Virus record (IMG/VR): IMGVR_UViG_3300009093_000035
Span: 184,580 to 248,579 of that record
DNA: 64,000 bases
Direction: 5' to 3' (one strand)
Shown: positions 11,349-25,949 of the stretch, in pieces
Position numbering within the stretch: the stretch's first letter is position 1
How the letters are laid out: each line of letters begins with the position of its first letter
Notes under the pieces: generated by a model
What the model was told of the DNA's origin: nothing
Databases searched by the model: none
The model's input: the letters and a program-made list of their open reading frames with translations, nothing else
Made by a program: the position numbers and the translations under genes

Positions 11349-11352
11349 AAAG

Positions 11353-12154: not shown

Positions 12155-12228
12155 GGTGATCGGGGGGAGTTGAACCCACCGTACCTCGGGTCACAGCCGA
12201 GTGCCTTAACCGTTAGGCTACGACCACC
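12155..12228 (-). tRNA. tRNA-His(GUG) with encoded G-1
   Basis: CTCGG-CTGTGAC-CCGAG; G-1:C73. Confidence 0.9.
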
Positions 12229-12239
12229 ATGAAGAGATT

Positions 12240-12371
12240 CGGGTGACAAGAGCGGAGAAGACGTTTTTTGGACTGCCGCTCTACCATCTGAGCTACCACC
12301 CCCTTTCGGAGACGGGCGGGACTCGAACCCGCGACCCGCAGTGTTGTTGTAGTCCTATTCCAATTCACCCG
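12240..12371 (-). ncRNA. Y RNA-like #2 (YrlA-type, permuted tRNA module)
   Basis: CGGGUGAAU..GACUACA / CUUGUCACCCG; T arm GCGGG-TTCGAGT-CCCGC, GAAA-capped acceptor, then D arm TAGCTCAGATGGTAGAGC. Confidence 0.85.
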
Positions 12372-12372
12372 A

Positions 12373-12445
12373 CGTTCCCGGGAGGACTCGAACCTCCGAC
12401 CTGCCGTTTAGGAAACGGCCCCTCTATCCACTGAGGTACGGGAAC
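12373..12445 (-). tRNA. tRNA-Arg(CCU)
   Basis: GCCGT-TTCCTAA-ACGGC. Confidence 0.9.
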
Positions 12446-12449
12446 ACGA

Positions 12450-12588
12450 TTGCGAGAGAGGGACTTGAACCCCCACGAGCGCTTCCGTTACTTCCCTGGG
12501 AAGCGCTTCCCGTACGGGTTTCACGGATGGGCCTAGGACCCTGTCTCTCCGAGTCGCCTCGGCGCGTCTGCCATTTCGCCATCTCGCA
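12450..12588 (-). ncRNA. Anticodon-less oversized tRNA-Leu mimic A
   Basis: Acceptor TGCGAGA/TCTCGCA, Leu D arm GGCGAAATGGCAGACGC, anticodon arm capped by GCGA, three hairpins in the variable region, normal T arm. Confidence 0.7.
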
Positions 12589-12596
12589 TCGAACAC

Positions 12597-12748
12597 TAGG
12601 GAGAAGGGGAATCGAACCCCCACCGGGCTCTACAGGACTCTCCGCGGTTCGCGACCCTCGGATCCTCCCGTTGGCTCGGGGTGCGCACCCCTTACCGTCC
12701 CTGCCGGAACTTTCATCCCGGTGCGTCTACCAGTTCCGCCATCTCCCG
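12597..12748 (-). ncRNA. Anticodon-less oversized tRNA-Leu mimic B
   Basis: Leu D arm GGCGGAACTGGTAGACGC, CCGGGAT-GAAA-GTTCCGG, ~80-nt structured variable region, normal T arm. Confidence 0.7.
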
Positions 12749-12770
12749 TCAACGAACGGAAGGAAAAGTT

Positions 12771-12903
12771 TGGGCGACAAGTGTTGGCGAAGATCTTTTC
12801 GTCGCTCTACCAACTGAGCTACCGCCCCGTGAAAGTGGGGCGGGCTGGACTCGAACCAGCGGCCTCCGGCTTGAAATGCTGTAATCCTCTCCGAATTCAC
12901 CCA
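12771..12903 (-). ncRNA. Y RNA-like #3 (YrlA-type)
   Basis: UGGGUGAAU..GAUUACA / CUUGUCGCCCA; GCTGG-TTCGAGT-CCAGC, closed acceptor CCGCCCC/GGGGCGG, D arm TAGCTCAGTTGGTAGAGC. Confidence 0.85.
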
Positions 12904-12904
12904 A

Positions 12905-12977
12905 CGTTCCCGGAGGGGATCGAACCCCCGACCTGCGGTTTCGAAGACCGCCGCTCTTCCGGCTGAGCTACGAGAAC
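12905..12977 (-). tRNA. tRNA-Arg(UCG)
   Basis: GCGGT-CTTCGAA-ACCGC. Confidence 0.9.
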
Positions 12978-13019
12978 CCTCGATTTATGGCTTCGAGGTA
13001 CCTTTGCGCGCGAAGGAAG

Positions 13020-13094
13020 CGTCCCGTGGGGGATTTGAACCCGCCGTCGCCAGATTGAGAGTCTAGCATCCTAGGCCAACTAGAAGAACGGGAC
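13020..13094 (-). tRNA. tRNA-Glu(CUC)
   Basis: Loop CTCTCAA. Confidence 0.88.
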
Positions 13095-13099
13095 ATAGA

Positions 13100-13175
13100 G
13101 GCGAGACAAGAGAGACCGAGACGAGGGGCTTTCGCCCCACATTACCCAAAATGTAGTCCCGATCGAATTCTCACC
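13100..13175 (-). ncRNA. Y RNA-like #4 (minimal)
   Basis: GGUGAGAAU..GACUACA / CUUGUCUCGCC; GGGGC-GAAA-GCCCC hairpin. Confidence 0.72.
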
Positions 13176-13176
13176 A

Positions 13177-13249
13177 TGGACAGGAGGGGGATTGAACCCC
13201 TGACCTCTGCATTGCGAACGCAGCGCTCTCCCAGCTGAGCTACCCGCCC
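13177..13249 (-). tRNA. tRNA-Ala(CGC)
   Basis: Loop TTCGCAA, G3.U70. Confidence 0.92.
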
Positions 13250-13390
13250 AAACGAAAACCAGGTTCTCGAATCGGACTCGGGTAGGTCGATTCCCTTTCG
13301 GGAGGTGGCCTACCCTATCCCTAGCTCCTCGGGCCTGGCGCTACCGAGAAGATCCGAGCCAGCGAGGACCGAGGTCCCCGCGAAGATAGC

Positions 13391-13514
13391 CGTGCGACAA
13401 GAGTGACAGCGACGTTTTCTAGGCCCGAGCCTCGCTCCCTTTCGGGAACGACCAGGATTCGAACCTGGCTCGATTGTTGTTCATACAATGTAGTCCCCAT
13501 CGAGTATTCGCACG
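13391..13514 (-). ncRNA. Y RNA-like #5 (T arm plus GAAA-closed acceptor, degenerate D arm)
   Basis: CGUGCGAAU..GACUACA / CUUGUCGCACG; CCAGG-TTCGAAT-CCTGG; TCGTTCCC-GAAA-GGGAGCGA. Confidence 0.8.
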
Positions 13515-13516
13515 AG

Positions 13517-13589
13517 TCGGGATGACCGGATTCGAACCGACGTCTCCTGCGCCCAAGGCAGGTGCTAAACCAGGCTCAGCTACATCCCG
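13517..13589 (-). tRNA. tRNA-Pro(UGG)
   Basis: CCTGC-CTTGGGC-GCAGG. Confidence 0.9.
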
Positions 13590-13600
13590 AACAGAAACCA

Positions 13601-13676
13601 TGCAGCGAACTGGAGTTGAACCAGTGCCTCCCGGGTTTCAACCGAGCGCTCTACCTATGGGCTGAGCTATCGCTGC
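13601..13676 (-). tRNA. tRNA-Phe(GAA)
   Basis: Loop TTGAAAC. Confidence 0.85.
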
Positions 13677-13679
13677 GTA

Positions 13680-13752
13680 TGCTACGGGTCGGAATTGAAC
13701 CGACGACACCCCGCTCTTCAGGCGAGTGCTCTACCAACTGAGCTACCGTAGC
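13680..13752 (-). tRNA. tRNA-Phe(GAA)
   Basis: Loop CTGAAGA. Confidence 0.9.
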
Positions 13753-13758
13753 AAGACA

Positions 13759-13832
13759 CGCCCCCGAAGAGAATCGAACTCTCCTCGACCCTGCTTGACA
13801 AGCAGGCGTCTTCACCAGAGGACTACGAGGGC
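13759..13832 (-). tRNA. tRNA-Asp(GUC)
   Basis: CCTGC-TTGTCAA-GCAGG. Confidence 0.88.
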
Positions 13833-13850
13833 AGGAACCAGGAAATTTAA

Positions 13851-13939
13851 GGCGACAAAGATCCCGAAGACACAGAGCGAGCCTTTCGGCCCTCTCTTCT
13901 GGTTTTGGTAGAAGAATGTAGTCTTCAGAGCATTCGCCC
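13851..13939 (-). ncRNA. Y RNA-like #6 (minimal)
   Basis: GGGCGAAU..GACUACA / UUUGUCGCC; GAAA-capped hairpin. Confidence 0.7.
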
Positions 13940-13940
13940 A

Positions 13941-14008
13941 CGGGCTGTTAGGGACTCGAACCCAGCGCGGTCGGTTTTGGAGGCCAACCTGTGCCCTGCA
14001 CCCAGCCC
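13941..14008 (-). tRNA. tRNA-Trp(CCA) with miniature D arm
   Basis: Loop CTCCAAA; D arm GTGC-AGG-GCAC. Confidence 0.7.
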
Positions 14009-14157
14009 AATAGCTGAGACCGTCCGGCCTACGGGCCCGCACGATCTCGTACCTCCTCCTACACATGGCAGGTGAGATCTAAGAATAGCGACCGGCGCTC
14101 GCCCCGAGTGCTCGTCCTCCCTACCGGAGGCTGCGTTCTCGAAGTGCTTTCGGTCTA

Positions 14158-14229
14158 CTCCTGGGGCAGGAGTCGAACCTGCGGTAGGCGAGTTAACAGC
14201 TCGCTGCCTTACCACTTGGCTACCCAGGA
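14158..14229 (-). tRNA. tRNA-Asn(GUU)
   Basis: GCGAG-CTGTTAA-CTCGC. Confidence 0.92.
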
Positions 14230-14269
14230 AGGATCTCAACGGACCCCATCGGAAGAAACGAAGGAGGAA

Positions 14270-14341
14270 CTCCGGCAGTAGGGGTCGAACCTACGACATC
14301 CTGGTTAACAGCCAGGCGCTCTTCCACTGAGCTATACCGGA
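14270..14341 (-). tRNA. tRNA-Asn(GUU)
   Basis: CCTGG-CTGTTAA-CCAGG. Confidence 0.92.
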
Positions 14342-14425
14342 ATGTGAGGGAGGCCCTCCCGTACCCGAGCCCTTGCGAGGCGATTCGAGTACGAGAGTCC
14401 CCTCTCCGCGCCCTTGGGGAGGGCG

Positions 14426-14455
14426 CCTGAAGGAACTCCTATTCAGTTGTCAGAG
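14426..14455. repeat. Arm 2 of the long-range inverted repeat; boxA-like on the minus strand
   Basis: Minus strand CTCTGACAACTGAATAGGAGTTCCTTCAGG. Confidence 0.85.
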
Positions 14456-14516
14456 ACCTCGGAACACAGAGAGCCGTAGTTCACTACGTACTCCAGCCAC
14501 AGGGTGGCTTTTTCAA

Positions 14517-14587
14517 TTCCCAGTCGAGGATTCGAACCTCAGTTGTCCGAGTCAGATTCGGAAGTCCTGCCGCTAGACGAACCGGGA
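14517..14587 (-). tRNA. tRNA-Gln(CUG)
   Basis: TCCGA-ATCTGAC-TCGGA. Confidence 0.88.
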
Positions 14588-14659
14588 TGGGACACCGGGG
14601 ACTCAAACCCCGTTCTTCCGATTAAGAGTCGGATGCTTCATCACTAAAGCTTGTGTCCC
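14588..14659 (-). tRNA. tRNA-Lys(CUU)
   Basis: TCCGA-CTCTTAA-TCGGA. Confidence 0.85.
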
Positions 14660-14677
14660 GAACTGGAACCGAGGAAC

Positions 14678-14749
14678 TGGGACCGGTGGGGATCGAACCC
14701 ACGACCGTCGGGTTAAAAGCCCGCTGTTCTACCGCTGAACTACGGTCCC
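14678..14749 (-). tRNA. tRNA-Lys(UUU)
   Basis: Loop CTTTTAA. Confidence 0.9.
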
Positions 14750-14796
14750 GAGAGGGGAACCGCAGGGTTTGAGGTTGACGTACATCTTTCGAACCA

Positions 14797-14879
14797 TGGA
14801 GACGCCAGGAATCGAACCTGATTTCCTCCGAAGAGGGGCGGGGTTACAGTCCGCCTACGAGGCCACTCGTATCATCTCC
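14797..14879 (-). tRNA. tRNA-Tyr(GUA)
   Basis: Loop CTGTAAC, V arm. Confidence 0.8.
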
Positions 14880-14890
14880 AAAAGGAACCA

Positions 14891-14974
14891 TGGAGTGTGA
14901 GGGATTCGAACCCTCAATGTCCGAAGACTCCTGATTTACAGTCAGGTGGGGCTACCAATGCCCACGTACACTCC
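14891..14974 (-). tRNA. tRNA-Tyr(GUA)
   Basis: CCTGA-CTGTAAA-TCAGG, V arm. Confidence 0.82.
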
Positions 14975-15041
14975 GCGAGAGAAACCGAGCCGAACCGAAG
15001 TCGAGGAACCGAACGAGAGGACCGAGGGAAACCAGGACCCT

Positions 15042-15082
15042 AAAACGACTTCAGGCCGCCCGGGTTTCCCTGGGCGGCCTGA
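15042..15082 (-). terminator. Intrinsic terminator / attenuator hairpin upstream of the RNA operon
   Basis: TCAGGCCGCCCAGGG-AAA-CCCGGGCGGCCTGA followed by AGTCGTTTT. Confidence 0.65.
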
Positions 15083-15112
15083 CATCATCCCTTTGGGGGG
15101 TAGAGAGTCAGG

Positions 15113-15253
15113 TCACCCGGGGGTACCCTGGAGGTGGCGCGCGATCAGATCCGAGGCTACCGCGACCGTTCCTTCCAAGGCGCACCACGCCGTATTCGGC
15201 TCGGAGGCCGGATACATGCTTGAAGGCTTGGAGGTAAAGGTTTTGGAAGACAT
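15113..15253 (-). CDS. Putative 46-aa leader peptide (uORF) of an attenuator
   Basis: MSSKTFTSKPSSMYPASEPNTAWCALEGTVAVASDLIARHLQGTPG*; stop overlaps an antiterminator strand. Confidence 0.5.
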   Translation of the reverse strand: MSSKTFTSKPSSMYPASEPNTAWCALEGTVAVASDLIARHLQGTPG

Positions 15254-16608
15254 GATCGCCGGTTACAGGTTGACTTTTCGAAGCTAGTACAGGCCGAAGA
15301 GGGAGTCTAGGGAAATCGACTCGGGTGAGTCACTTTCTTTTTCGTCGCCTTCTCGCCGGACTGTTACGCCGTCCCGATCCAGTTCGGTGAATCTTTTTCC
15401 GCTAACTGGAAAAGTCCACTTTATTCGCCCAGGTAGACGAAGCGATCTTCGCTCTCAAGGAGGCGTCGATCGTAGCAACAGAGGTCGGATTGGCCCACCC
15501 TCCCTCACACTGAGGCGTCATCGGAGCCAACTCGATCAGAACTGGAGCGACTACGTCCTCCCAGAAGGACCACCAGTATCCAGCGTTCTCTTCGAAGTTC
15601 GGGAAGACGTACACCACCGGAGAAGGAGCCGCTCTACTTCCCCGAGGGAAGACCGGCTTCCTCTTCTCCGAAAGGATCCCCCAGCAGTCGTTCAGAAGAC
15701 GCTTGTAGGAGACGTTCGAACGGTAGGGAGACGTCACAGAGGAACCTCTTCTTCCCGACTCCCCATAGAGAAGATACACGTCCGCCCGAGGATCTCGCGA
15801 TCCCCAAGTAGAGGAGACGGATCTCTCCGCTCCTGTCACCCCTTCGAGCTTCTCGGGACTCTTCGCTCTCTCGCTACCCTAACAAGGACTACAACGACAA
15901 CGTCTACAATCACCTACAGCAGAAGGACTAGAACCAGAACTACACATTGGGTTTGTATCAGTTGGAGTAGAAGCTCAACTACACAGTTGATTGAAGATCA
16001 CACAATCAATCTATCCCTCTAATCCCCTAACTACTTCTCTGGATCTCCCTTACGGGAAGTTCCTTGTTCCACCTAGCTCGGGATCCTTCTCCGAGGAGAA
16101 GGCGAGACTACCAACTGGAACGGGGGAGGTGATGATCGAGGAGGTCTGTTCTTACCGTAACTACCTCTGAGAGCCTCGTACGTAGGCTAACTTGCGGTGG
16201 GAGTCTTTCCATCGGGAAGGAGGTCTGGGGAACTCTCTCCGTAGGGGTTCGTCCGATAGCGCCCACATAGCTCTATGACCCTTTCGAGTCTGAGACCCCG
16301 TAAGTAACTCCTGTTGGAGGAGGAACTCTCTGTCCCCAAGGTCGGACCGAGTATCCCTTGTGGGGAGGAACTCGGAAGACAGTGGGAGGGAATCTCACGG
16401 TCGAGATCTCCGAAGAGATCCCGAGGACGAACCAGGGTGGGGTTATACGGGAGCTTTTTTCTTGAGTCTACCCACGACCGTAGACACACTGCGGAGACGC
16501 CAGGAAGACCTGTAGGAACCCTTGGGGTGTCGGGGAGGAAGATCCGGGTGTCCGAGGAGATCGACAGCTCCTCGGGGCTCCTAGGGGTAAGTGTTGGCCG
16601 ACCGGAGA

Positions 16609-16637
16609 GGTGTAGAACCTCTTGGCTCGTCCGTTAC
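16609..16637 (+). promoter_or_regulatory. Bipartite phage promoter motif upstream of the CCA enzyme
   Basis: GGTGTA-N13-CGTCCGTTAC. Confidence 0.7.
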
Positions 16638-16646
16638 AGGTAGAAC

Positions 16647-17855
16647 ATGACCCAGATCACCAGCTCGAAGTCGGTCGCCCTCATGAAGTTCCTCTCGGCC
16701 CTCGCCCGAAAGCTCGGGGTAGGGGCTCACGTCTACGTCGTGGGTGGGGCCGTCCGGAACTTCCTCATGGGACAGCCGGTGAAGGACCTCGACGTCGTGA
16801 TCGACTCGATCGCCCTCGGAGAAGGTCGAGACAGCGCCTGGTTCGCGTCCAACGTTCTGGAGGCGATCCCCGAGTGGTCCAACCTCACGACGAACCAGTA
16901 CGGGGTCGCGATCCTCACGGTGAAGGGACCCTGGGTCCTCGACGGCTTCTCCATGGAGGGGGAAGTGATCGAGATCGCCAACGCTCGGAAGGAGTCCTAC
17001 GGGTCCTCGGGCGGGAAAGGGAAGGGCTACAAGCCCACCGACGTCCAGCCCTCCACGATCGAGGAGGACATCTACCGGCGCGAGTTCACGTTCAACACCT
17101 TGCTGTGGCGCCTCGAAGACGTTGCGGAAGGACCGGAAGGGGCTCCGGTGATCGACATCACGGGGCTCGGCCTCACCCACCTCAAAGAGAAGCTGATCCA
17201 AACGCCTCTCGATCCGGACCGGACGTTCTCCGACGACCCGACGAGGATGCTCCGGGCGATCAAGTTCCTCATGCGCTACGACCTCCGCCTCTCCGAAGAG
17301 GTCGAGCGGTCGATCATGAAGAACGCCTCGAAGATGACCCAGATGCCTTGGGAGGCGGTCGCTACGATCCTCGTCCGTGACATCCTCTCGCTCCCCAGCG
17401 CGAAGGAAGCTCTCTTCCGGATGATGGGGCTCGGGCTCGTTCGAGTTCTGAAGGGGATGGTCCAGGACCAGCCTCCCTTCGCCTCGTACATGGCGGGTCA
17501 GTTCGGCTCGGGCGAGGCGGACCTGAAGCTTCTCGTCCTCATGGATGACCTCGGGCTCGGAGGACGCGCGTTCAGCTTCCTCTCCCCGGCCCAGAAGGTT
17601 CGCTTCAAGGCTCTGGTCGTCGGGGCCGAGGACGAGTGGGTCCGGAAGCTCTACACGCTTCTCCAGAAGCCCCCGATCCGATCTCTGGCTCTGTTCGCGG
17701 ACTTCGGCCTCGAAGGGAAGGCGCGGTCAGCCCCCGCGATCTTCGCCCGAGAGGCGATCCTCGAAGACCTCTCGTTGGTCGAAGAGCCGGAACGGATCGA
17801 AGCGGTCGTACGGGAGATGCTCGGGGGGATTCCGCCGGCCCCTCCCGCCCCCTAG
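16647..17855 (+). CDS. cca: Class II CCA-adding tRNA nucleotidyltransferase / poly(A) polymerase family
   Basis: YVVGGAVRN..DLDVV, IEIANARKESY, EDIYRREFTFN, FSDDPTRMLRAIKF; tRNAs here lack encoded CCA. Confidence 0.85.
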   Translation: MTQITSSKSVALMKFLSALARKLGVGAHVYVVGGAVRNFLMGQPVKDLDVVIDSIALGEGRDSAWFASNVLEAIPEWSNLTTNQYGVAILTVKGPWVLDGFSMEGEVIEIANARKESYGSSGGKGKGYKPTDVQPSTIEEDIYRREFTFNTLLWRLEDVAEGPEGAPVIDITGLGLTHLKEKLIQTPLDPDRTFSDDPTRMLRAIKFLMRYDLRLSEEVERSIMKNASKMTQMPWEAVATILVRDILSLPSAKEALFRMMGLGLVRVLKGMVQDQPPFASYMAGQFGSGEADLKLLVLMDDLGLGGRAFSFLSPAQKVRFKALVVGAEDEWVRKLYTLLQKPPIRSLALFADFGLEGKARSAPAIFAREAILEDLSLVEEPERIEAVVREMLGGIPPAPPAP

Positions 17856-18040
17856 GACGCCCGCTCGGGCGGGAGCCCCATCGCTGTGCGGAACGCTCGG
17901 CGACGGCTCCTAGCCTCGTCTACGGTCCCCGGCGGTGGTCGAGGAGGCTCCAGCGGGTCGAGCCTCGGGATGTACCACCCGACGCCGAGCCGGTAGACCC
18001 ATCCCTGAGGCGGGGTGGGGATTCGAGTCGCCATGACGCG

Positions 18041-19597
18041 TCAGACGGCCGGGAGCTGCTTCTTCATCCATTCAGCGAAGACATCGAGTGCGTCGTTCGC
18101 GGAACCGACCTCGTGAGACCCGGGGAGCTTCTTCCCATCCGGTCCGCAGACCGTGAATCGCTTCACGTTCGTATGGCCGTACGAATAGTTCTTGTTCGGC
18201 ACCATCAGAGGGATCTGCTTGTTCAGTTGGCGAACCCAACCCACGACCCCTTCCGAGGAAACGATCGCCGAGATCTTCGAATCGGCGCTCTGGAACAAGT
18301 CGATCGTCTTCGGCATCCCCGCCAGATCCTTCGGGCTCGTCGAAAGACGAAGTCCGCGTTCGGCCTTCTGGATCCGCTGACGGAGACGTTCGACGCGACC
18401 TCCCATGTCCTTCCGGTACTGCTTGATGACGTCTGTCTTCTTGTTCGACTTGTACATCTCGTCCAAGGTCTGGTCGAACTGAGCCTTCAGCTCTTCGTAG
18501 CCCAAGCCGGACTCAGGGTCGACGATCTGGACGGGAGCCTTCCCCGCGAGCCGAGACATGTAGATCGAGGCGACCTGTTCAGCAAGGTCGATCCGCGCTT
18601 CGCGAGCCTTCGCTTCCCGAAGCCGAGCGAGGTAGCGGCCCGCGACACGATTGCGAAGATTCGCCATCCGACCCGAGAGAAGACTCTGGACCTGGGTCGG
18701 GTTCTTCTGGAACAGGTTGAGGATCTTCGCCTGCTCGTCGGGGTGAGAGGAGATGTACTGCTCCAGGACGTTCATGAACTCGATCTTCGCCCCGGAGAAC
18801 TGAGAGAGGGTCGCTCCGATCGCCGCCGCGGACTCGCTGTCGCTCAGACCGCGCTGACCGGAGCGGAGGAGATCGAGGTACTGCTTGATGCGTTCCCCGC
18901 GCTTCGCTCGGATCGTGATCTTCGGGAGCTTCTCGTAGAGCCAGTCGAAGAACTGCTTCGCGAGAGGATGGTCCGGGTGGGTGAAGAGGGCGTCGATCAC
19001 GGCCGACCACGAGTCGGGCTCGTCCGAGTCCGGCTTCGTGACCATCTCCTCCTCGTTGGTCCACGTCTCGTTGTAGCGAGCGCGAGTCTTCTCGGACTTG
19101 ATCACGTCGAGTGCGCGCCGGAAGACAAAGGTGATGGCCTGGCGCGAGGCTTCGTCGGGCGTGTACCCCTCGGCCATGACCTTGCTGTTCTTCTGAGCAG
19201 CGTACCGACCGGCTGCCCAGAACGGGGACTTCCCGCCCATGGCGAGGTTGTTCCCCTCTTCGTCGGTTCCCCAGCCCTGGAGCCCCATCAGGGACTGCAT
19301 CAGGTCGGCCGCCTCGGTCGTCCGCTCGACGTTCTGGGAGCGGATGATCTTGTTGACGTTCATGAAGGCCTTCCGGTAGAGACCGGTGTCCCCCTTCGAG
19401 AGCCACTCCGGAGAGACGCCGCCGATCTCCTTCGCCATGTCCCCGATCTTCCCGAGAAGTTGGGTCTTCCCGGTGAGGCCGCGGATCCGAGTGAAGGGGG
19501 CCGCGCCGAGGAAGCCTTCCAGGAACTGGGCTCGCGCGAGCACGTCCATCTCGTCGAAGATGCCGGCCGTCTTGAGGAAATTGGATAGCAGCAACAT
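18041..19597 (-). CDS. Sigma-factor-like domain (regions 2 and 4) within a larger protein carrying KTA/RVA motifs
   Basis: EAADLMQSL, ITFVFRRALDVIKSEKTRARY, HTH-like GLSDSESAAAIGATLSQFSGAK. Confidence 0.4.
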   Translation of the reverse strand: MLLLSNFLKTAGIFDEMDVLARAQFLEGFLGAAPFTRIRGLTGKTQLLGKIGDMAKEIGGVSPEWLSKGDTGLYRKAFMNVNKIIRSQNVERTTEAADLMQSLMGLQGWGTDEEGNNLAMGGKSPFWAAGRYAAQKNSKVMAEGYTPDEASRQAITFVFRRALDVIKSEKTRARYNETWTNEEEMVTKPDSDEPDSWSAVIDALFTHPDHPLAKQFFDWLYEKLPKITIRAKRGERIKQYLDLLRSGQRGLSDSESAAAIGATLSQFSGAKIEFMNVLEQYISSHPDEQAKILNLFQKNPTQVQSLLSGRMANLRNRVAGRYLARLREAKAREARIDLAEQVASIYMSRLAGKAPVQIVDPESGLGYEELKAQFDQTLDEMYKSNKKTDVIKQYRKDMGGRVERLRQRIQKAERGLRLSTSPKDLAGMPKTIDLFQSADSKISAIVSSEGVVGWVRQLNKQIPLMVPNKNYSYGHTNVKRFTVCGPDGKKLPGSHEVGSANDALDVFAEWMKKQLPAV

Positions 19598-19661
19598 GCG
19601 TGAGTCTCTCCGGCGCCAACGTTGGGGCCTTCCCCCAGAAGCTCATCGTTTCGTTACCGGG

Positions 19662-19690
19662 AGTGGAAAGAAGCCGGCCTCGTTCGTTAC
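19662..19690 (+). promoter_or_regulatory. Bipartite promoter upstream of the ECF-like sigma gene
   Basis: AGTGGA-N13-CGTTCGTTAC. Confidence 0.65.
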
Positions 19691-19904
19691 CTCTTCGAGG
19701 GGATCTCGTACCCCTCCGAAGGCGGTGTATACACTACCGATAGTGCCATCGAAAATTCGACCCTGACACCTGGGTTTTTTCTTTACGAGGCCCCACCCGT
19801 TCGGTATATGTACCTCGACCTAGCGTGACCTCGCGTCCGTTCAGGTTCCATTAAACGCCCGAAAGTCACTGACTTCAGGGCCGATTCGGAGAGTCCCCCT
19901 ACCA

Positions 19905-20702
19905 ATGTCTATCCTCCTCGGGTTCGACCCGACGCTCCCCTGTCCAGTTTCGGAAGAAGACCGCTACAAGTTCCTCACGAACTACAGCGACCACCTTTCG
20001 GCCCAGACTCGCCCTTCCCTGTCCGGTCGAGACACCCTCACCGGCAAGTGGATGGAGAAGTACGGAGCCGAGACGCGGGCGATGCTCGTGGAGCACCTCA
20101 GCCACAAGCTTCCGACGTCGCGTCGGGTGAAGGTGGTCGAGGACCACGTTCAGACGTTCCTCGTCCGTCTCGTCGAGCGAGACACGCTCGCTCCGAAGAT
20201 CCTCGAAGCGAAGGGCTCCCGCGGGAACCCGATCAACCCCAGCGTCCTCCGCGTGTGGTGCTTCCAGAGCGCCTGTACCGAGATGCGTGGGTGGGGTGTG
20301 GACGCTTCGCTCCGGAAGTCTCTCGGCGCGAAGACGAATCGCGACCGGATGGCCGATCAGGGGAAGCTCCCGACGGTGGTCGTTCAGTCGACCGAGGCCG
20401 TGATCGAGCGTCGCTACGAGGTCGAGAACGGGGAGGTGGTATCCGACATCCACAACCCGAACGAGGTCTCGATCGAGAGGTCGATGATCTCGTCCGAGAC
20501 CTGCGCTCGGATCCGTTCGCTCGTTCAGCGGAAGGTCGGCTCTTCGGATCCGAGCCTCGTGGGTCTCGTCTCTCTCCTCATGGAGAGCGGAGACCATCGT
20601 GAAGCGGCGGCCGAGATGGGCATCTCCCGTACGAAGATGAAGTCGGCGATGTCTCTGATCCGAGAGGCGCTCGAAGGCGAAGATCTTCTCGCGGTCGACT
20701 AG
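19905..20702 (+). CDS. ECF-like RNA polymerase sigma factor
   Basis: Region 2-like VEDHVQTFLVRL..LRVWCFQSACTEMR; region 4 HTH DHREAAAEMGISRTKMKSAMSLIREAL. Confidence 0.6.
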   Translation: MSILLGFDPTLPCPVSEEDRYKFLTNYSDHLSAQTRPSLSGRDTLTGKWMEKYGAETRAMLVEHLSHKLPTSRRVKVVEDHVQTFLVRLVERDTLAPKILEAKGSRGNPINPSVLRVWCFQSACTEMRGWGVDASLRKSLGAKTNRDRMADQGKLPTVVVQSTEAVIERRYEVENGEVVSDIHNPNEVSIERSMISSETCARIRSLVQRKVGSSDPSLVGLVSLLMESGDHREAAAEMGISRTKMKSAMSLIREALEGEDLLAVD

Positions 20703-21295
20703 AGGTCGCCCGGACCCTGTCCGATCTCCTTCAGCGCGTTCTCGATCATCATCTCGATCCCGGTCTTCGTCCGCCCCAGAAGGTCCGAAAGGTCCTTCAT
20801 CTCTCGGAGCGGACGAAGCATCAGGGACGGAGCTTCGGTTCGTCCGACGCCCATCGACTTGTGCTTCGCGAGAACGCGCGCGGCGTCCTTGAACTCGCCC
20901 TCGACCTTCGCCGCCATGGCGTTGAGGTCGGCGACCCTCCGGTTCAGCACCTTCGTGACTTCACCAGCCGCTCCGCCAAGGATCAGCTTCTCGGCCTTCT
21001 CCCACTGCTCGGGGGTATTCGCCCTCTTCGAGAGCGCGCGACCCGCTACGCGAGCCGGAGAGGCCTTCTTGCTGGCCTTCTCGTAGTCATCGGCGACGTT
21101 CTGGGCGAGGTCCCAAACCCAGTGGGTCTCGTCGTCGAGCCAGCCACCGAGGTCCTTCTTGTCGAACTCGCTGGCCGCCGCCTCGGCCAGCTCGGTCATG
21201 TTGACCTCGCCGGTCTTCGGGTCGACGTAGTCCTCGACCATCTTCTTCATCCACGTCTTCACAGACGCCTTTGAAGGATCTGCTGCGGTTCTCAT
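20699..21295 (-). CDS. Hypothetical, putative virion protein
   Basis: Strong GC3 bias; RTA/RVA/KRA motifs. Confidence 0.65.
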   Translation of the reverse strand: MRTAADPSKASVKTWMKKMVEDYVDPKTGEVNMTELAEAAASEFDKKDLGGWLDDETHWVWDLAQNVADDYEKASKKASPARVAGRALSKRANTPEQWEKAEKLILGGAAGEVTKVLNRRVADLNAMAAKVEGEFKDAARVLAKHKSMGVGRTEAPSLMLRPLREMKDLSDLLGRTKTGIEMMIENALKEIGQGPGDL

Positions 21296-21296
21296 C

Positions 21297-21968
21297 TCAG
21301 TGTCCTCCGAAGCCTGAGGTCTGATACAGCGGCTTCCCGTCCCACTTGTAGGCGGTCTGGGAGTCGGTGACCTTCACGTACATCCGATTTCCGCCGGACG
21401 TCTGAGGGATCTTCTTGATCTCGGGTCCGGAGAAGTGGTTGGGCTGGGCCACGACGTAGTCCGCCCCGCGCTCCTCGCGAACGACCTTCCCATCGACTGG
21501 TCGGATACCGACCTGCTTCCCCTTCAGAGAAGTGACCTGGTAGAAATTGATGTTCGTCTGGTCATAGCCCCAAGACGAGTACAGCAGATCTCCGACCTGG
21601 AGTCCATGCTGGAAGTTCTTCTTCTCTTCGAGGCGCTTTCGCTTCTCGGCGACCTGGGCCTCGTAGCTGATGACCTGGTCCACGATCGATCGGGAACGAG
21701 CGGCGTCGTCTCGGAAGCGTCGGTACCAGAGGGGCTTGTCGGCCTTCCCCGCCCAAGCCGCTGCCATGATCGCGCCTTCCATCTCCCAGGACCAGATCTC
21801 CAGCCCTTCCGGAGTATCCTCCCGCTTCAGCGTCGGGTTGTCCTTCGGGATGAAGCTCGCGCGTGGGAACGTGAAGCTTGCGGCTTCCTTCAAGAGCGGA
21901 AGGAGCGCCGACCGAAGCTCGGGCTTCGAGTGGGCGAGGCGGATGAGAGATCGGCGGAGAGTGTTCAT
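21297..21968 (-). CDS. Hypothetical with LIRLAHSKPELR leader
   Basis: Shared leader; LQVGDLLYSSWGYDQTNINFYQV resembles a common small phage domain. Confidence 0.7.
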   Translation of the reverse strand: MNTLRRSLIRLAHSKPELRSALLPLLKEAASFTFPRASFIPKDNPTLKREDTPEGLEIWSWEMEGAIMAAAWAGKADKPLWYRRFRDDAARSRSIVDQVISYEAQVAEKRKRLEEKKNFQHGLQVGDLLYSSWGYDQTNINFYQVTSLKGKQVGIRPVDGKVVREERGADYVVAQPNHFSGPEIKKIPQTSGGNRMYVKVTDSQTAYKWDGKPLYQTSGFGGH

Positions 21969-22057: not shown

Positions 22058-22480
22058 ATGGACACGGCCCTCGCTCCACGTCGACCCCTTCGCCGTTCTT
22101 TCCTCTCGCGGGAGAAAGTGAAGGAGATCCAAGATCTTACGTTGAAGATCGCGGGAGAGGTCCTTCCGAGCGGGGTCGTTCCGCTCGTTCGCTGGAACTA
22201 CTCGCGGGAGTCGTTGGGCCTCGCCTTCACGAGCTTCCTGTGCTTCCGAGATCCTCGGATCACCTACTCGCGCCGTCTCATGAAGTACGCCTCGGAGGCG
22301 GAACAGATCGAAACCGTCTACCACGAGATCTCCCACCTCATCGTCTTCTACGATCTCTCGGCGAACCATGACACAAGCGGGGTCTGGGAGGCGATGCGAG
22401 CGGAAGGAGACCACGGACCCCTCTTCCGCGCTGCGATGGCAAAGTTCGGATACCCGAACCCGACGGGTTGCGGCCGCTAG
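22058..22480 (+). CDS. SprT-like zinc metalloprotease
   Basis: TVYHEISH..DHGPLF. Confidence 0.75.
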   Translation: MDTALAPRRPLRRSFLSREKVKEIQDLTLKIAGEVLPSGVVPLVRWNYSRESLGLAFTSFLCFRDPRITYSRRLMKYASEAEQIETVYHEISHLIVFYDLSANHDTSGVWEAMRAEGDHGPLFRAAMAKFGYPNPTGCGR

Positions 22481-22968: not shown

Positions 22969-25059
22969 TCAGGCCTTCTTCGAAGCGGTCTCGACGACTT
23001 CCTCGTCCTCGTCGTCCTCATCGGCCGCCAAGAACGTACTCGCGACGCGAGAAGCGCTCTTCCCGCCGTCCCAAGCGAGGATCTCCGAGACCGACGGGCT
23101 CGCCGAGGCGATGATGGGAGCCGGCAGAGGCGGGTAGGCCTCCTGGATCATCTCGCTCCACCCGCACTTCGCTTTCTTCGCGTGCTTCGAGAGGAAGCCC
23201 GTGATCACGTCGTGCTTCGAGCCCATGCGGGCGTTGAGGTCGCAGGCGATCACGCCCGCCTCGTGGTCGACGTCCGAGCAAGCCTGGAGGGCGAGCTTCG
23301 AGGTCTTCCCCGAGAAGCCGTAGCGGCCCCCCTCGCGCTTCCCGGCCGTCTTCTCAGGCTTCCCCGGTCCGATGTCCGCCATGCAGGCCCGGAGCATCCT
23401 CGCGCTGCGGGAGCCCGTCCGCTTCTGGTGCTCTTCGAGGAAGCCCGGGGTCTCCGAGTCCTTCTCGTAGATCGCCTTCGCGAGCTTCTGGGTGAACTTC
23501 TGGAGGCGGTTCGTCGCCGATCCGCAGACGCGCTCCGCTTCCTTCGTGTACCCATAGAGGCCCGAGGCCGCGGTCTTGTCGGAAGCCGTCTTGTCCTCGT
23601 CTTCGGAGACGGGAGCGAGGTCCATGAGGAGAGCGCTGTCCTCTCCGCAGGCGTCCTTTTCGGAGGCGCCCTTCTCCAGCTTGTTCTTCAGCTTCTCGAC
23701 GGCCGGAGGCGGGTTCTCGACGTTCTCCTTGAACTCGGGGCCGACGACCTTCGAGACCTGCTCGGGGGTCATCGACTTCCCCTTCTCGAACTTCGACTCC
23801 TTCAGGCCCTCTTCGTAGTCGTCCGCCGAGAGTTCCCCCGCCTGCTTCTTCAGGTAGTCGGAAGTCGGCTTCTGACACGAGGGGGAACCGGGGTTCTTGT
23901 TCTTGCAGTAGATCGACCAGGCCGTAGCCCATGCCTGATCGTCGGAGTAGTCCGGGTTTCCCTCGGAGACCTCCTTGAAGTAGCGGTCCACGTCCTTCGG
24001 GACGTCGACTGCGTAGTGTTCGACGCTGGCGCGCTTCGACTCGAAGCGGACCTCGATGATGTCCCCCCACTTTTCGACCATCTTGTCGTACCACGTGTCG
24101 AAGGCCTTTTGGCTCTTGAAGGACTTCTCCTTCCAGCTTTCGCCTCGGACTTGGTACATGATGCTGTTGGGCCAGTCCCCGTCCCCTTCAGCAGCGGACT
24201 TGAACTCATCCTTGTGTTCGTCCTTCTGCTCGTTCCATTCCTTCTTGTCCGCCGGGTCCATGTTCTTCGTCGGGTCAGCGGGCTTCCCCTTCTCGAACTT
24301 GGCATCCTTCAGCTCTGCTTCGTAGTCGGCGACCCGAAGAGAGACGACCTCGAACGAACCTTCCTTCGAGGTGGACTTCAGCTTCTTCTGAGCCTTCTGG
24401 GCTTCCATCTGAGCCGTTCCGCTGGAGGTGTACTCACCGAGGAGCTTCGGCTGCTTCGCCTTTTGGGAAAAGGACCCCTTCTGGACTTGCCAGATCACGA
24501 TCTCTCCCTTGTCCTGGCGAACTTGCCAGACGCTCCCCTCGTCGAACTTGTCTCCCGGATATGAGTCGGCAGCGGACTTGAACTCGTCCTCGTGCTCGTC
24601 TTTCTGCTTCTTCCATTCCTTCGCATCCGCGTCGGACATGTTCTTCGTCGGGTCGGCCGGCTTCCCCTTCTCGAACTTCGAATCCTTCAGGGCTTCAGCG
24701 AACGCGTCCGTGGAAAGCTTCATGTCCTCGTCTCCTGAAGGAACCTGTTCGATGTCCGTTACCGTCGTGTCCGCATCCGGACCCGACAGATAGATAGTGA
24801 GCTTCTTGTCCCGAGCCGGGTCGAGGACGTAGAGAGTGTCCTTACTGACGCGGACGATCTCGTACTCCCGAGAGGGCTTCCCCTTGTAGGAGACTTCGAC
24901 GACGTCCCCCTTCTTCAGACCTGAGGGGATCTTCACCGTCATCGGGGCGGCCTTCTTCGGGAGGTAGGATCCACCAGCAGTGACCGGAACGGAGCTATCC
25001 GCAGCCGCGCCGCCGTAGTCCCGACGTGTTCGTAGAGGTTGGGTCACGATCACATCCAC
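22969..25059 (-). CDS. Large acidic/Lys-rich protein with internal repeats, putative virion protein
   Basis: KFEKGKPADPTKNM..EW..QKDEH.DEFKSAA twice plus a third KFEKGK; duplicated C-terminal YG(Y/F) helical unit. Confidence 0.7.
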   Translation of the reverse strand: MDVIVTQPLRTRRDYGGAAADSSVPVTAGGSYLPKKAAPMTVKIPSGLKKGDVVEVSYKGKPSREYEIVRVSKDTLYVLDPARDKKLTIYLSGPDADTTVTDIEQVPSGDEDMKLSTDAFAEALKDSKFEKGKPADPTKNMSDADAKEWKKQKDEHEDEFKSAADSYPGDKFDEGSVWQVRQDKGEIVIWQVQKGSFSQKAKQPKLLGEYTSSGTAQMEAQKAQKKLKSTSKEGSFEVVSLRVADYEAELKDAKFEKGKPADPTKNMDPADKKEWNEQKDEHKDEFKSAAEGDGDWPNSIMYQVRGESWKEKSFKSQKAFDTWYDKMVEKWGDIIEVRFESKRASVEHYAVDVPKDVDRYFKEVSEGNPDYSDDQAWATAWSIYCKNKNPGSPSCQKPTSDYLKKQAGELSADDYEEGLKESKFEKGKSMTPEQVSKVVGPEFKENVENPPPAVEKLKNKLEKGASEKDACGEDSALLMDLAPVSEDEDKTASDKTAASGLYGYTKEAERVCGSATNRLQKFTQKLAKAIYEKDSETPGFLEEHQKRTGSRSARMLRACMADIGPGKPEKTAGKREGGRYGFSGKTSKLALQACSDVDHEAGVIACDLNARMGSKHDVITGFLSKHAKKAKCGWSEMIQEAYPPLPAPIIASASPSVSEILAWDGGKSASRVASTFLAADEDDEDEEVVETASKKA

Positions 25060-25949
25060 TTGAACATCGGGGTGAGGGTACCCCGGTTCTTGAAATTGTA
25101 GGCGACGTACTTCAGCCGCTTGTATCCGTCGCGCTGGTAGCGAAGAGTCTGGGTGTCTTGGGCGATCGCCTCGTCACCCTGAAGATTCGTGAAGTACGCC
25201 TTGACCCCTTCCGGGAAGGAGATGAAGGAGACGTGGGTGAAGACCTTGCCATCCTTTCGGAACCCGTCAGGGAACCGGTCCGTGATCTCGAAGTCCACGA
25301 TCAACGGAGGGCCGTCCTCGAAGTCCTCGGCACCCGCGAAAGTAGACCAATCCCCGCTGTCGAACGGACGGATCTTGCCTTCCATCGCCTTCTTCAGGAA
25401 GCGAGCGGCAACCCGTGTTGCCATAACGACTCGACCCGCTTGAACCTGGCGACCGTCCATGGTGATCTCTCTTTCGACAGCTAGGGCGGGTCGACGGACG
25501 AGGTAGTCCGGCCACGCCTCGAACCACTTCTTCAAGAACTCTTCCCTCGGGAGAGTTCGAACAGTTTGCTCCGGATCGGGGATGTTCGGATCCGCGACGG
25601 ACACCTCGGTGTCGGTTACGTCGAACACGACCGAGGCGTGAGACCAATCCCGACCTTCCGGGTTCCAGGCGATCATCACGGCGACTCCGCGATCCGTCCA
25701 CTCCCTCAGCTGCTTCATGGAGCAGGGAGTGATCAGGGTCGCGCGCATCCCGAAGTGCTGACAAGCCGCGAGGGCCTGTTCCCAGGAAGCTCCCTTCATG
25801 GGCTTCGCGCCCATGACCTTGTTGACGGTGTCCTCGTCGTGGAAGGACCCCTGGGCCCCGAGCGCCATGCTGAGCGACGCCGCCATACAGCTGTACTGAG
25901 TACGCTGACGAATCGGAACGATGTCCGCTTTGGCTGACTTCGACGTCAT
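25050..25949 (-). CDS. Peptidase C39-like cysteine protease
   Basis: QRTQYSCMAASL, WSHASVV, VADPN catalytic C/H/D. Confidence 0.8.
   Translation of the reverse strand: MTSKSAKADIVPIRQRTQYSCMAASLSMALGAQGSFHDEDTVNKVMGAKPMKGASWEQALAACQHFGMRATLITPCSMKQLREWTDRGVAVMIAWNPEGRDWSHASVVFDVTDTEVSVADPNIPDPEQTVRTLPREEFLKKWFEAWPDYLVRRPALAVEREITMDGRQVQAGRVVMATRVAARFLKKAMEGKIRPFDSGDWSTFAGAEDFEDGPPLIVDFEITDRFPDGFRKDGKVFTHVSFISFPEGVKAYFTNLQGDEAIAQDTQTLRYQRDGYKRLKYVAYNFKNRGTLTPMFKWM

What the first reader, a model, noticed from the sequence alone, without database searches (positions are those of the whole stretch)
18041..20702. Divergent pair of sigma-like genes, one possibly virion-packaged
Seen: 19905-20702 has ECF-like regions 2 and 4. 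18041-19597 also shows region-2-like and HTH segments, but carries KTA/RVA motifs found in the putative virion proteins here. Inference: an injected sigma could fire the bipartite promoters, including that of the second sigma, forming a transcription cascade.
Basis: inference. Interest (0 to 1): 0.6.

Follow-up and report, generated by a model that had tools for sequence, protein, structure and literature searches.

The report
Paired sigma-like genes, huge soil phage
A huge soil phage carries two back-to-back genes for very divergent sigma-type transcription factors that probably redirect the host's RNA polymerase to phage promoters, but nothing shows that either protein travels inside the virus particle.

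Summary
Both ORFs are real and conserved: A is 18041-19597(-), 518 aa; B is 19905-20702(+), 265 aa. The window is the end of a 248-kb fragment of a huge rhizosphere phage. An A-family gene lies divergently next to the B homolog in all 7 related loci examined.

B is a divergent ECF-type sigma, with separate sigma2 and sigma4 fold matches and sub-threshold sigma70-ECF profile hits.

A has a sigma-like N-terminal ~300 aa. A broad family profile hits FliA/sigma28 (E 1.5e-4). Residues 210-294 match sigma4. A predicted complex puts its region-2.2-like helix on the beta' clamp helices (0.68; best control 0.00). A disordered linker with an RVAGRYL motif and a private C-terminal domain follow.

The bipartite promoters are real: -35 GAGTGTAA, -10 TCGTTAC, 20 sites against 0 in shuffles. 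One lies 215 nt upstream of B, but inside an insertion absent from relatives and ahead of a terminator-like hairpin. None precedes A.

The RVA and KTA-containing ("RLAH") motifs are strongly enriched short motifs. Their identifiable carriers are enzymes, not structural proteins.

Sigma-likeness is supported and a cascade is plausible. Virion packaging of A has no support. I file this as a new variant of a known kind.

The parts
18041..19597 (-). ORF A, 518 aa: sigma-like N-terminal module, then a linker with a short motif, then a C-terminal domain
   Evidence: ORF list; coding signature; family alignments A2 and A4; AF2 model pLDDT 77
19058..19561 (-). ORF A residues ~13-180: sigma2-like region, including the region-2.2-like helix AADLMQSLMGL (D98, Q101, M104 invariant; G105 nearly invariant)
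   Evidence: A4 profile aligns to FliA region 2.2-2.3. The predicted complex with E. coli beta' 267-298 uses residues 13-23, 35-47 and 92-108: score 0.68, best control 0.00. Two-domain VIA alignments to sigmaA, sigmaS and sigmaL
18716..18970 (-). ORF A residues 210-294: sigma4-like HTH domain
   Evidence: VIA Z 5.2-5.8, rmsd 2.9-4.2 A, 62-80 residues, 25-27% identity to M. tuberculosis SigD region 4; collinear hhalign with the sigma4 of B
18629..18649 (-). RVAGRYL short linear motif (aa 317-323) in a low-confidence linker (pLDDT <50 over 310-354)
   Evidence: Motif conserved in the A family. Enriched 8 vs 0.1 in the proteome. Replaced by the RLAH motif at the same position in the LR745208.1 homolog
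18041..18535 (-). ORF A residues 355-518: helical hairpin plus beta-sheet domain, shared by only about 5 close homologs; function unknown
   Evidence: AF2 secondary structure; alignment A2; only generic helical-hairpin fold matches
19905..20702 (+). ORF B, 265 aa: divergent ECF-type sigma factor
20028..20342 (+). ORF B residues 42-146: sigma2 domain, with EDHVQTFL (region-2.2-like) and LRVWxxQSAxTEMRGWG (region-2.3/2.4-like)
   Evidence: VIA Z 6.0-7.5 to sigma2 of RpoE/NepR, SigR, SigK, SigC and SigE; invariant columns in A1
20472..20699 (+). ORF B residues 190-265: sigma4 domain with HTH
   Evidence: VIA Z 5.7-7.9 to sigma4 of sigmaH, SigA, CnrH, SigD, SigR and sigmaE; Pfam Sigma70_r4_2 E 0.023; PDB profile hit to FliA E 0.015
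19660..19691 (+). Bipartite promoter copy GGAGTGGAAAGAAGCCGGCCTCGTTCGTTACC, with one mismatch in the -35, 215 nt upstream of ORF B. A second TCGTTAC without a -35 lies at 19651-19657
   Evidence: PWM score 34.4; lies in a window-specific insertion relative to 5 relatives
19759..19786 (+). Terminator-like hairpin plus T-run between that promoter and ORF B
   Evidence: The region held 3 such sites against 3.0 expected, so this site is weak on its own
19782..19809 (.). Element conserved across relatives: TTTAC-N18-TATAT on the plus strand, or TATAC-N16-GTAAAG read on the minus strand. Probably the ancestral promoter of B or A
   Evidence: Alignment A3; the only occurrence in the 248-kb record
19857..19881 (+). 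Conserved stem-loop in the leader of ORF B, just upstream of the Shine-Dalgarno GGAGAG (19888-19893)
   Evidence: RNAalifold: 9 pairs, 4 with compensatory changes, none broken, in 6 phages

Best explanation
The locus is a conserved divergent cassette of two phage-encoded sigma70-family factors that reprogram the host's core RNA polymerase.

ORF B is a minimal ECF-type sigma: sigma2, a ~45-aa linker with a beta-hairpin, then sigma4. It most likely reads the lineage-specific promoters -35 GAGTGTAA / -10 TCGTTAC. These have a fixed spacing, and many drive short-leader or leaderless genes. In this phage B also has a copy upstream of itself, which would give ECF-style positive autoregulation.

ORF A is a larger sigma28-like protein. 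Its region-2.2-like helix is predicted to dock on the beta' clamp helices. It probably reads a different, still undefined promoter class. It carries a short linear motif (RVAxRYL here, the RLAH motif in most relatives) that tethers it to an unknown partner also used by about 20 other phage proteins.

Shown here: the sigma-like folds and profiles, the synteny, the promoter family, and the motif enrichment. Inferred: which sigma reads which promoter, the order of expression, and what the motif binds.
For: ORF B:
- Foldseek's top PDB hits are sigmaE, sigmaL and sigmaB.
- VIA gives separate sigma2 (res 42-146, Z 6-7.5) and sigma4 (res 190-265, Z 5.7-7.9) matches.
- Family members hit TIGR02937 sigma70-ECF over positions 22-160 of 165 at E 1.6e-5, 4e-3 and 6e-3.

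ORF A:
- The profile of 88 diverse family members hits FliA at E 1.5e-4 to 1e-3, sigmaF at 6e-3 and WhiG at 1e-2, collinear from region 2.2 to 4.2.
- Residues 210-294 match sigma4 at Z 5.2-5.8.
- hhalign of the A family against the B family gives E 7.6e-4 over 199 collinear columns.
- The predicted complex with E. coli beta' 215-345 scores 0.68 against a best control of 0.00. That mark was reached by 58 of 80 solved complexes and 2 of 110 mismatched pairs. Runs agree in at least 69% of contacts and the partner pLDDT is at least 73. The interface is beta' 267-298 against the invariant D98/Q101 helix.

Synteny: an A-family gene is the divergent neighbour of the B homolog in 7 of 7 loci.

Promoters:
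- 20 sites against 0 in shuffles, almost all intergenic and 7-90 nt upstream of same-strand starts.
- An orthologous site precedes the CCA-enzyme gene in a relative.
- ECF sigmas need near-consensus bipartite promoters with 16-18-bp spacers, and about half autoregulate (PMC7776599).

Polymerase: no RNAP beta, beta' or T7-type family was found in the held record, and no beta family in the complete 485-kb relative. Jumbo phages without an RNAP typically encode sigma factors (PMC7824862).
Against: - Neither protein reaches any curated sigma-family threshold.
- Fold Z-scores of 5-8 lie in the range the tool says is common for helical proteins.
- The complex pass may only reflect likeness to solved sigma-beta' complexes, and it used E. 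coli beta' because the host is unknown.
- No expression data exist.
- The promoter copy upstream of B is not conserved in relatives and is followed by a terminator-like hairpin.
- The held genome is about 56% complete, so a phage RNAP cannot be excluded for this phage.
- Very divergent phiKZ-like RNAP subunits could escape Pfam models.
Confidence: 0.72

Rival explanations
1. ORF A is packaged in the capsid through the RVA/RLAH motif acting as a targeting peptide, is injected with the DNA, and fires the bipartite promoters, including the one before ORF B. This gives an injected-sigma cascade.
For: - The motifs are real, enriched and conserved across related phages. They sit at termini or in linkers, as targeting peptides do.
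- ORF A lacks the bipartite promoter, so it belongs to another expression class.
- The bipartite promoters do not resemble a housekeeping consensus, and the sigma-70 pattern scan found no site in 17800-21400.
- A weak Atlas lead points to a polyvalent-protein domain, LPD38, at score 0.90.
Against: - There are no virion data.
- Carriers with recognisable domains are nucleic-acid or other enzymes, not structural proteins.
- LPD38 was not recovered by Pfam scans of 16 + 88 family members.
- The promoter looks ECF-like, which fits B.
- B's copy of the promoter is absent in five relatives that keep the gene pair.
Confidence: 0.1
2. The sigma-promoter assignment is swapped. ORF A is made early by the host holoenzyme and reads the GAGTGTAA/TCGTTAC promoters. 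ORF B is a downstream (middle or late) sigma with a different promoter class.
For: - A copy of the promoter lies upstream of B but not of A.
- A has both sigma2-like and sigma4-like domains, so it could read a bipartite promoter.
- A second enriched upstream motif, GCGTAA(A/G)G, is available for the other sigma.
Against: - The strict spacing and CGT-containing -10 are typical of ECF promoters (own knowledge, plus PMC7776599 for spacer and stringency).
- The copy upstream of B is not conserved.
Confidence: 0.2
3. ORF A is not an initiation factor. It would be a sigma-fold regulator, such as a decoy or anti-sigma-like RNAP binder or a DNA-binding scaffold, tethered through its motif to a replication or transcription hub. 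The analogy is T4 gp33 and gp55 binding the sliding clamp.
For: - Sigma evidence for A is all sub-threshold.
- The motif is shared with topoisomerase IB, RNA-repair, WGR and pyrophosphatase-like proteins, which suggests a nucleic-acid-machinery hub.
- A carries a large non-sigma C-terminal domain.
Against: - The alignment to FliA is collinear from region 2.2 to 4.2.
- The predicted canonical beta' clamp-helix interface uses the invariant residues.
Confidence: 0.12

Closest known systems
ECF (group 4) sigma70-family factors, e.g. E. coli sigmaE and M. tuberculosis SigL (PDB 6jbq, 6dv9)
   Same: ORF B has a two-domain sigma2 + sigma4 architecture with region-2.2-like and 4.2-like sequence motifs. 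A candidate cognate promoter has strict spacing, a CGT-containing -10, and a copy upstream of its own gene.
   Different: Below every curated HMM cut-off. It has a long, strongly conserved linker (TEMRGWGVDASLRxSRGAKTNRDR) with a predicted beta-hairpin. No anti-sigma gene was recognised next to it. It is encoded by a huge phage and always paired with a second sigma-like gene.
Group 3 sigma28/FliA-type factors (PDB 1rp3, 9wsf)
   Same: These are the best sequence-profile match of the ORF A family, collinear from region 2.2 through region 4.2. The predicted docking on the beta' clamp helices is canonical.
   Different: E-values reach only 1e-4 to 1e-3. ORF A has an insertion between regions 2.2 and 2.3, no clear sigma3, a conserved N-terminal LKxAG-FDEMDVLARAQF segment, a C-terminal short-motif tail (RLAH or RVA), and in this phage a further 165-aa domain.
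Phage sigma cascades that use host RNAP: SPO1 gp28 then gp33/34, and T4 gp55/gp33 (own knowledge); sigma factors of 'group 2' jumbo phages that lack an RNAP (PMC7824862)
   Same: Phage-encoded sigma-like proteins redirect host core polymerase to phage-specific promoter classes. No phage RNAP was detected.
   Different: Both proteins belong to new, very divergent families. They form a fixed divergent gene pair with a conserved leader hairpin. One carries a motif shared with about 20 unrelated phage proteins.
T4 capsid-targeting sequences and packaged, injected proteins (internal proteins, Alt; own knowledge)
   Same: Short terminal peptides are shared by diverse proteins. Several RLAH motifs end in L-K-E followed by A, which resembles the T4 prohead-protease L/I-x-E site.
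   Different: The motifs also occur internally and at C-termini. Many lack the Glu. No protease link, structural-gene link or proteomic evidence exists.

Membership tests
sigma70 family, group 4 (ECF): ORF B | sigma2 domain fold (regions 2.1-2.4) | tested here: met
   Residues 42-146 at pLDDT ~87-96. VIA Z 6.0-7.5 (rmsd 2.9-4.5 A, 72-87 aligned) to sigma2 of RpoE, SigR, SigK, SigC and SigE
sigma70 family, group 4 (ECF): ORF B | sigma4 domain with region 4.2 HTH | tested here: met
   Residues 190-265. VIA Z 5.7-7.9 to sigma4 of sigmaH, SigA, CnrH, SigD, SigR and sigmaE; Pfam r4_2 E 0.023
sigma70 family, group 4 (ECF): ORF B | No sigma1.1 or sigma3 domains | tested here: met
   The model shows only two helical domains joined by a ~45-residue linker with a beta-hairpin
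sigma70 family, group 4 (ECF): ORF B | Score above the curated family thresholds (Pfam Sigma70_r2 / r4_2, TIGR02937) | tested here: not met
   Best in the family is TIGR02937 at 24.6 bits against a cut-off of 42.9. The window protein itself has no NCBIfam hit, and Pfam r4_2 scores 14.8 against 25.7
sigma70 family, group 4 (ECF): ORF B | Cognate bipartite promoter with a 16-18-bp spacer, often upstream of its own gene | tested here: inconclusive
   The promoter family exists and one copy lies 215 nt upstream of B. That copy is not conserved in relatives, and the sigma-promoter assignment is untested
sigma70 family, group 4 (ECF): ORF B | Binds core RNAP and directs initiation | not testable with these tools
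sigma70 family, group 3 (sigma28-like): ORF A | Sequence-profile relationship to sigma factors across regions 2 and 4 | tested here: met
   A4 profile against PDB: FliA 1.5e-4, 9e-4 and 1e-3; sigmaF 6e-3; WhiG 1e-2. Alignment query 90-279 to FliA 43-247
sigma70 family, group 3 (sigma28-like): ORF A | Region 2.2 helix docking on the beta' clamp helices | tested here: met
   In silico only. Score 0.68 against best control 0.00 (mark reached by 58/80 solved and 2/110 mismatched pairs). At least 69% contact agreement and partner pLDDT at least 73. Interface beta' 267-298 with ORF A 13-23, 35-47 and 92-108
sigma70 family, group 3 (sigma28-like): ORF A | sigma4 HTH domain | tested here: met
   Residues 210-294. 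VIA Z 5.2-5.8, with 25-27% identity to SigD region 4
sigma70 family, group 3 (sigma28-like): ORF A | sigma3 domain | tested here: inconclusive
   Residues 147-206 are helical, but part is low-confidence (179-195, pLDDT <50). No separate sigma3 match was seen
sigma70 family, group 3 (sigma28-like): ORF A | Score above curated Pfam / NCBIfam thresholds | tested here: not met
   No sigma family hit for the window protein. Among 88 members, one weak Sigma70_r2 hit (0.037) and one r4 hit (0.036)
Virion-packaged (capsid-targeted, injected) phage proteins | Presence in purified virions | not testable with these tools
   Uncultured phage. Only DNA metagenome runs hold it
Virion-packaged (capsid-targeted, injected) phage proteins | Targeting peptide shared with known structural or ejected proteins | tested here: not met
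   Carriers with domains are TopoIB/HAD-SAK, C39 peptidase, InPase-like, 2H-SAK and WGR. No carrier matched a structural family
Virion-packaged (capsid-targeted, injected) phage proteins | Prohead-protease cleavage site next to the peptide | tested here: inconclusive
   Some RLAH motifs end in L-K-E/A, but many do not. No protease gene was identified

The most novel reading that the evidence does not exclude
The RLAH and RVA peptides would be a proteome-wide sorting signal of this huge-phage lineage. It would load about 20 or more proteins into the capsid for co-injection, including a sigma-like factor, a topoisomerase, RNA-repair enzymes and a peptidase. ORF A would then be the first virion-delivered sigma factor, capturing host RNA polymerase at the moment of infection.
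Probability: 0.1. Interest if true: 0.85.

Novelty: new variant of a known kind. Interest (0 to 1): 0.5.

Why it matters
Huge phages without their own RNA polymerase must capture the host enzyme. This locus offers a concrete, testable circuit for doing so.

- It holds two new and very divergent sigma families, invisible to curated models.
- They sit in a fixed divergent pair, with a sharply defined promoter class that often drives leaderless genes.
- The leader of ORF B carries a conserved hairpin.

It also exposes two short peptide motifs shared by a sigma-like factor and about 20 unrelated enzymes. Their partner is unknown and could be a capsid, a clamp, the polymerase or a compartment. Finding that partner would say how these phages organise their proteins.

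The sigma families and promoters could also improve annotation of soil megaphages and supply orthogonal sigma-promoter pairs.

Tried and rejected
- Nucleotide search of the phage collection found no match. Pattern scans of viral contigs for both proteins found nothing.
- Direct Pfam and PHROG scans of A and B gave only noise-level hits.
- The narrow A2 profile against PDB gave nothing useful. The signal appeared only with the broad A4 profile.
- VIA-wide on the full ORF A model was swamped by the 355-415 helical hairpin and says nothing about the N-terminus.
- BFVD gave only weak phage-sigma rows.
- The Atlas feature hit to an LPD38-containing cluster (0.90) was not corroborated by Pfam scans, so I treat it as chance.
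- No RNA sequencing run holds the locus.
- Rfam found nothing in the intergenic region.
- The conserved TTTAC-N18-TATAT element is not a general promoter class; it occurs once in the record.
- The bipartite motif is absent from the distant relative LR745208.1.
- RNAP families were not found. The PF00940 control rang nowhere, so that negative result is uninformative.
- A PHROG scan of ten large proteins found helicases but no structural module.
- CGTAAAG / GCGTAA(A/G)G as a second promoter class remains only a lead.
Full report
**Context.** The window is the last 64 kb of a 248,579-bp IMG/VR virus record that CheckV rates about 56% complete.
- A protein identical to ORF B is also seen on a 472,929-bp contig.
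- The window holds 45 tRNA genes and a tmRNA and is about 60% G+C.
- Only rhizosphere and peat DNA metagenomes hold the sequence.
- The only relative in the phage collection is LR745208.1, an unannotated 485-kb uncultured phage.
- This is therefore an uncultured huge phage from soil with an unknown host.

**The observation.**
- ORF A (18041-19597, minus, 518 aa) and ORF B (19905-20702, plus, 265 aa) are divergent and 307 bp apart.
- Both have the genome's coding signature, with GC3 of 0.84 and 0.82.
- Both have homologs only on phage-like metagenomic contigs of up to hundreds of kb: 36 for B and 17 for A by word search.
- A full profile scan found 122 representatives of the A family at 50% clustering.
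- In all seven related loci examined, an A-family gene is the divergent neighbour of the B homolog, 170-252 bp away where DNA was read (307 bp in the window). Profile comparison gave E 3e-38 to 5e-122 for three of those neighbours.
- The pair is a conserved unit.

**ORF B is an ECF-type sigma.**
- Direct family scans gave only Sigma70_r4_2 at E 0.023.
- The AF2 model from 35 homologs has pLDDT 79, and above 87 in the two helical domains.
- Foldseek's best PDB rows are almost all sigma factors, led by sigmaE and SigL at E 6e-3 to 4e-2. Global superposition is poor, as expected for two mobile domains.
- The search independent of Foldseek resolved the domains. Residues 42-146 match sigma2 of RpoE, SigR, SigK, SigC and SigE (Z 6.0-7.5). 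Residues 190-265 match sigma4 of sigmaH, SigA, CnrH, SigD, SigR and sigmaE (Z 5.7-7.9).
- Three family members hit the NCBIfam sigma70-ECF model over nearly its full length, at E 1.6e-5, 4e-3 and 6e-3, all below the cut-off.
- The invariant residues lie in EDHVQTF (region-2.2-like) and LRxW..QSA.TE.R.WGVDA (region 2.3/2.4 and the start of the linker).
- I file B as ECF-like. It fails curated thresholds, so it is a new divergent family rather than an annotated member.

**ORF A has a sigma-like N-terminal 300 residues.** No single line is strong, but five independent lines agree.
1. Foldseek's top PDB rows are Thermus and mycobacterial sigmaA, with E from 0.03.
2. A second-look alignment places residues 210-294 on region 4 of sigmaA and of SigD (Z 5.2-5.8, 25-27% identity to SigD4). 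Residues 5-294 fall on two-domain sigmas.
3. A profile of 88 diverse family members hits FliA (E 1.5e-4, 9e-4, 1e-3), sigmaF (6e-3) and WhiG (1e-2). The alignment runs collinearly from aeDilQ..mGl (region 2.2) through sFy.aG (2.3) to the 4.2 HTH.
4. hhalign of the A family against the B family gives E 7.6e-4 over 199 collinear columns.
5. A predicted complex of ORF A 1-185 with E. coli beta' 215-345 scored 0.68 against a best control of 0.00. That mark was reached by 58 of 80 solved complexes and 2 of 110 mismatched pairs. Runs agree in at least 69% of contacts and the partner pLDDT is at least 73. The interface is beta' 267-298, the clamp helices, against ORF A 13-23, 35-47 and 92-108, which contain the family's invariant D18, R22, D98, Q101 and M104. 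As the tool warns, this shows likeness to solved sigma-beta' complexes, not binding.

After residue ~300 comes a low-confidence linker (310-354) and then a helical hairpin plus beta-sheet domain (355-518). Only the closest homologs share that domain.

**The motifs.**
- Both recur in related phages.
- Most members of the wider A family end with the RLAH motif. Positions 307-340 of the A4 profile pick out the 12 RLAH proteins of this genome.
- The LR745208.1 homolog has RLAH exactly where ORF A has RVAGRYL. The two motifs therefore look interchangeable.
- Carriers with recognisable domains are enzymes: a TopoIB/HAD-SAK fusion, a C39 peptidase, a pyrophosphatase-like protein, and in a relative a 2H-SAK RNA-repair protein and a WGR protein.
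- None matched a structural family, and a scan of ten large proteins found helicases only.
- The motifs are real and interesting, but calling their carriers 'virion proteins' has no basis in the sequence. A hub-binding peptide (clamp, polymerase or compartment) is at least as likely as a capsid-targeting signal.

**The promoters.**
- Intergenic k-mer enrichment led to GGAGTGTA(A/G)-N-CCTCGTTCGTTAC(A).
- A PWM finds 20 sites at 14 bits or more, against none in five shuffles. Of these, 14 are in the window, nearly all intergenic and 7-90 nt upstream of a same-strand start codon.
- Where the distance is 7-10 nt, counting back puts TCGTTAC at about -14 to -8 and GAGTGTAA at about -37 to -30. This is a classical -35/-10 promoter giving leaderless or short-leader mRNAs.
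- Variants of the motif precede genes in relatives, including the orthologous CCA-enzyme gene. The distant LR745208.1 has none.
- The fixed spacing, near-consensus sites and CGT-containing -10 fit ECF promoters (PMC7776599; the CGT point is my own knowledge).

**The spacer between A and B.**
- One site (19660-19691, one -35 mismatch, 34.4 bits) lies 215 nt upstream of ORF B. None lies upstream of ORF A.
- That site sits in a ~90-nt stretch missing from five relatives. A terminator-like hairpin with a T-run (19759-19786) lies between it and B.
- Two elements are conserved in the spacer of all relatives. One is TTTAC-N18-TATAT (19782-19809), unique in this record. The other is a stem-loop (19857-19881) just before B's Shine-Dalgarno, with 4 of 9 pairs showing compensatory changes and none broken.

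**Interpretation.** The best-supported reading is a sigma cassette that redirects host core RNAP.
- No RNAP family was found in the held record, nor a beta subunit in the complete relative.
- Jumbo phages without an RNAP typically encode sigma factors.
- B most likely reads the bipartite promoters and, in this phage, reinforces its own expression.
- A probably serves another class. GCGTAA(A/G)G is enriched upstream of genes, 11 against 1.4 expected, and remains an unproven candidate.

**Novelty.** Phage sigma factors and sigma cascades are known. Four things are new here:
- both families are invisible to curated models;
- the divergent pairing is fixed, with a structured leader;
- the promoter is sharply defined;
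- a sigma-like protein shares a peptide motif with about 20 unrelated enzymes.

Noticed in passing
window 3863-14974 (minus strand), plus 39758-39833: A dense array of 45 tRNA genes with a tmRNA (10604-11012, tag ANDSSYDQLAQAA). Rfam adds three weaker tRNA-like hits at 3942-4010, 4197-4269 and 11107-11179.
   Followed up: partly
window sites ending at 16637+, 19690+, 22051+, 38297-, 41938-, 45356-, 45425+, 48331-, 50263-, 53641-, 54534-, 57484-, 60209-, 61930-: A family of near-identical bipartite promoters (-35 GAGTGTAA, -10 TCGTTAC). Several lie only 7-10 nt from the start codon, implying leaderless mRNAs. One pair, 45356(-) and 45425(+), is divergent.
   Followed up: yes
window 1917-3536, 3541-3843, 21297-21968; G000 83.6, 100.2-102.5, 110.8, 124.5-126.4 and 140.9 kb: A ~30-aa motif, LRxxxIRLAHxKPELRxxLLPLLK(E/T)A, sits at the N-terminus (sometimes internally) of 12 otherwise unrelated proteins. 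It also sits at the C-terminus of most ORF A family members in other phages. Its partner is unknown.
   Followed up: partly
window 20699-21295 (aa 82), 25050-25949 (aa 179); G000 16184-17731, 111441-112502, 121339-122094 (two copies), 149738-152974: The RVAxR(F/Y)x motif occurs in linkers and at termini of a C39 peptidase, a TopoIB/HAD-SAK fusion, a pyrophosphatase-like protein and others. This is 8 occurrences against 0.1 expected.
   Followed up: partly
window 19857-19881: A conserved stem-loop in the leader of the ECF-like sigma gene, with compensatory changes across six phages. It could be a translational or stability operator. No Rfam family matches.
   Followed up: partly
window 62497(-), 39958(-), 19781(-); G000 3461, 16159, 100165, 171727, 178681 and others: GCGTAA(A/G)G / CGTAAAG is enriched just upstream of start codons: 11 upstream regions against 1.4 expected, and 11 of 14 CGTAAAG copies are intergenic. 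It may be a second promoter class.
   Followed up: partly
G000 8010, 8516, 33124(-), 133595, 135608(-) (loci L002, L003, L008): An ~80-nt repeated element, gcgctctg..ccgatagcctgaAAGAGTTTtcgagggg..ccatacccc, occurs five times outside the window. Its nature is unknown.
   Followed up: no
window 22969-25059 (minus): A 696-aa protein with internal repeats (DxKFEKGKPADPTKNM...KEW..QKDEH.DEFKSAA) and no family match.
   Followed up: no
window 16647-17855, 22058-22480, 25050-25949: A CCA-adding / poly(A)-polymerase-family nucleotidyltransferase (PF01743, E 1.5e-14), a SprT-like metalloprotease (E 1.5e-7) and a C39-family peptidase (E 1.9e-7). The first two have bipartite promoters.
   Followed up: partly
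window 15000-16640: About 1.6 kb between the tRNA array and the CCA-enzyme gene has no ORF with the coding signature and no Rfam match.
   Followed up: no
protein P0052: A 293-aa protein on a 2.2-kb ENA contig is 93% identical to about a fifth of ORF A and carries a Mur-ligase C-terminal domain hit. It may be a chimeric gene call.
   Followed up: no
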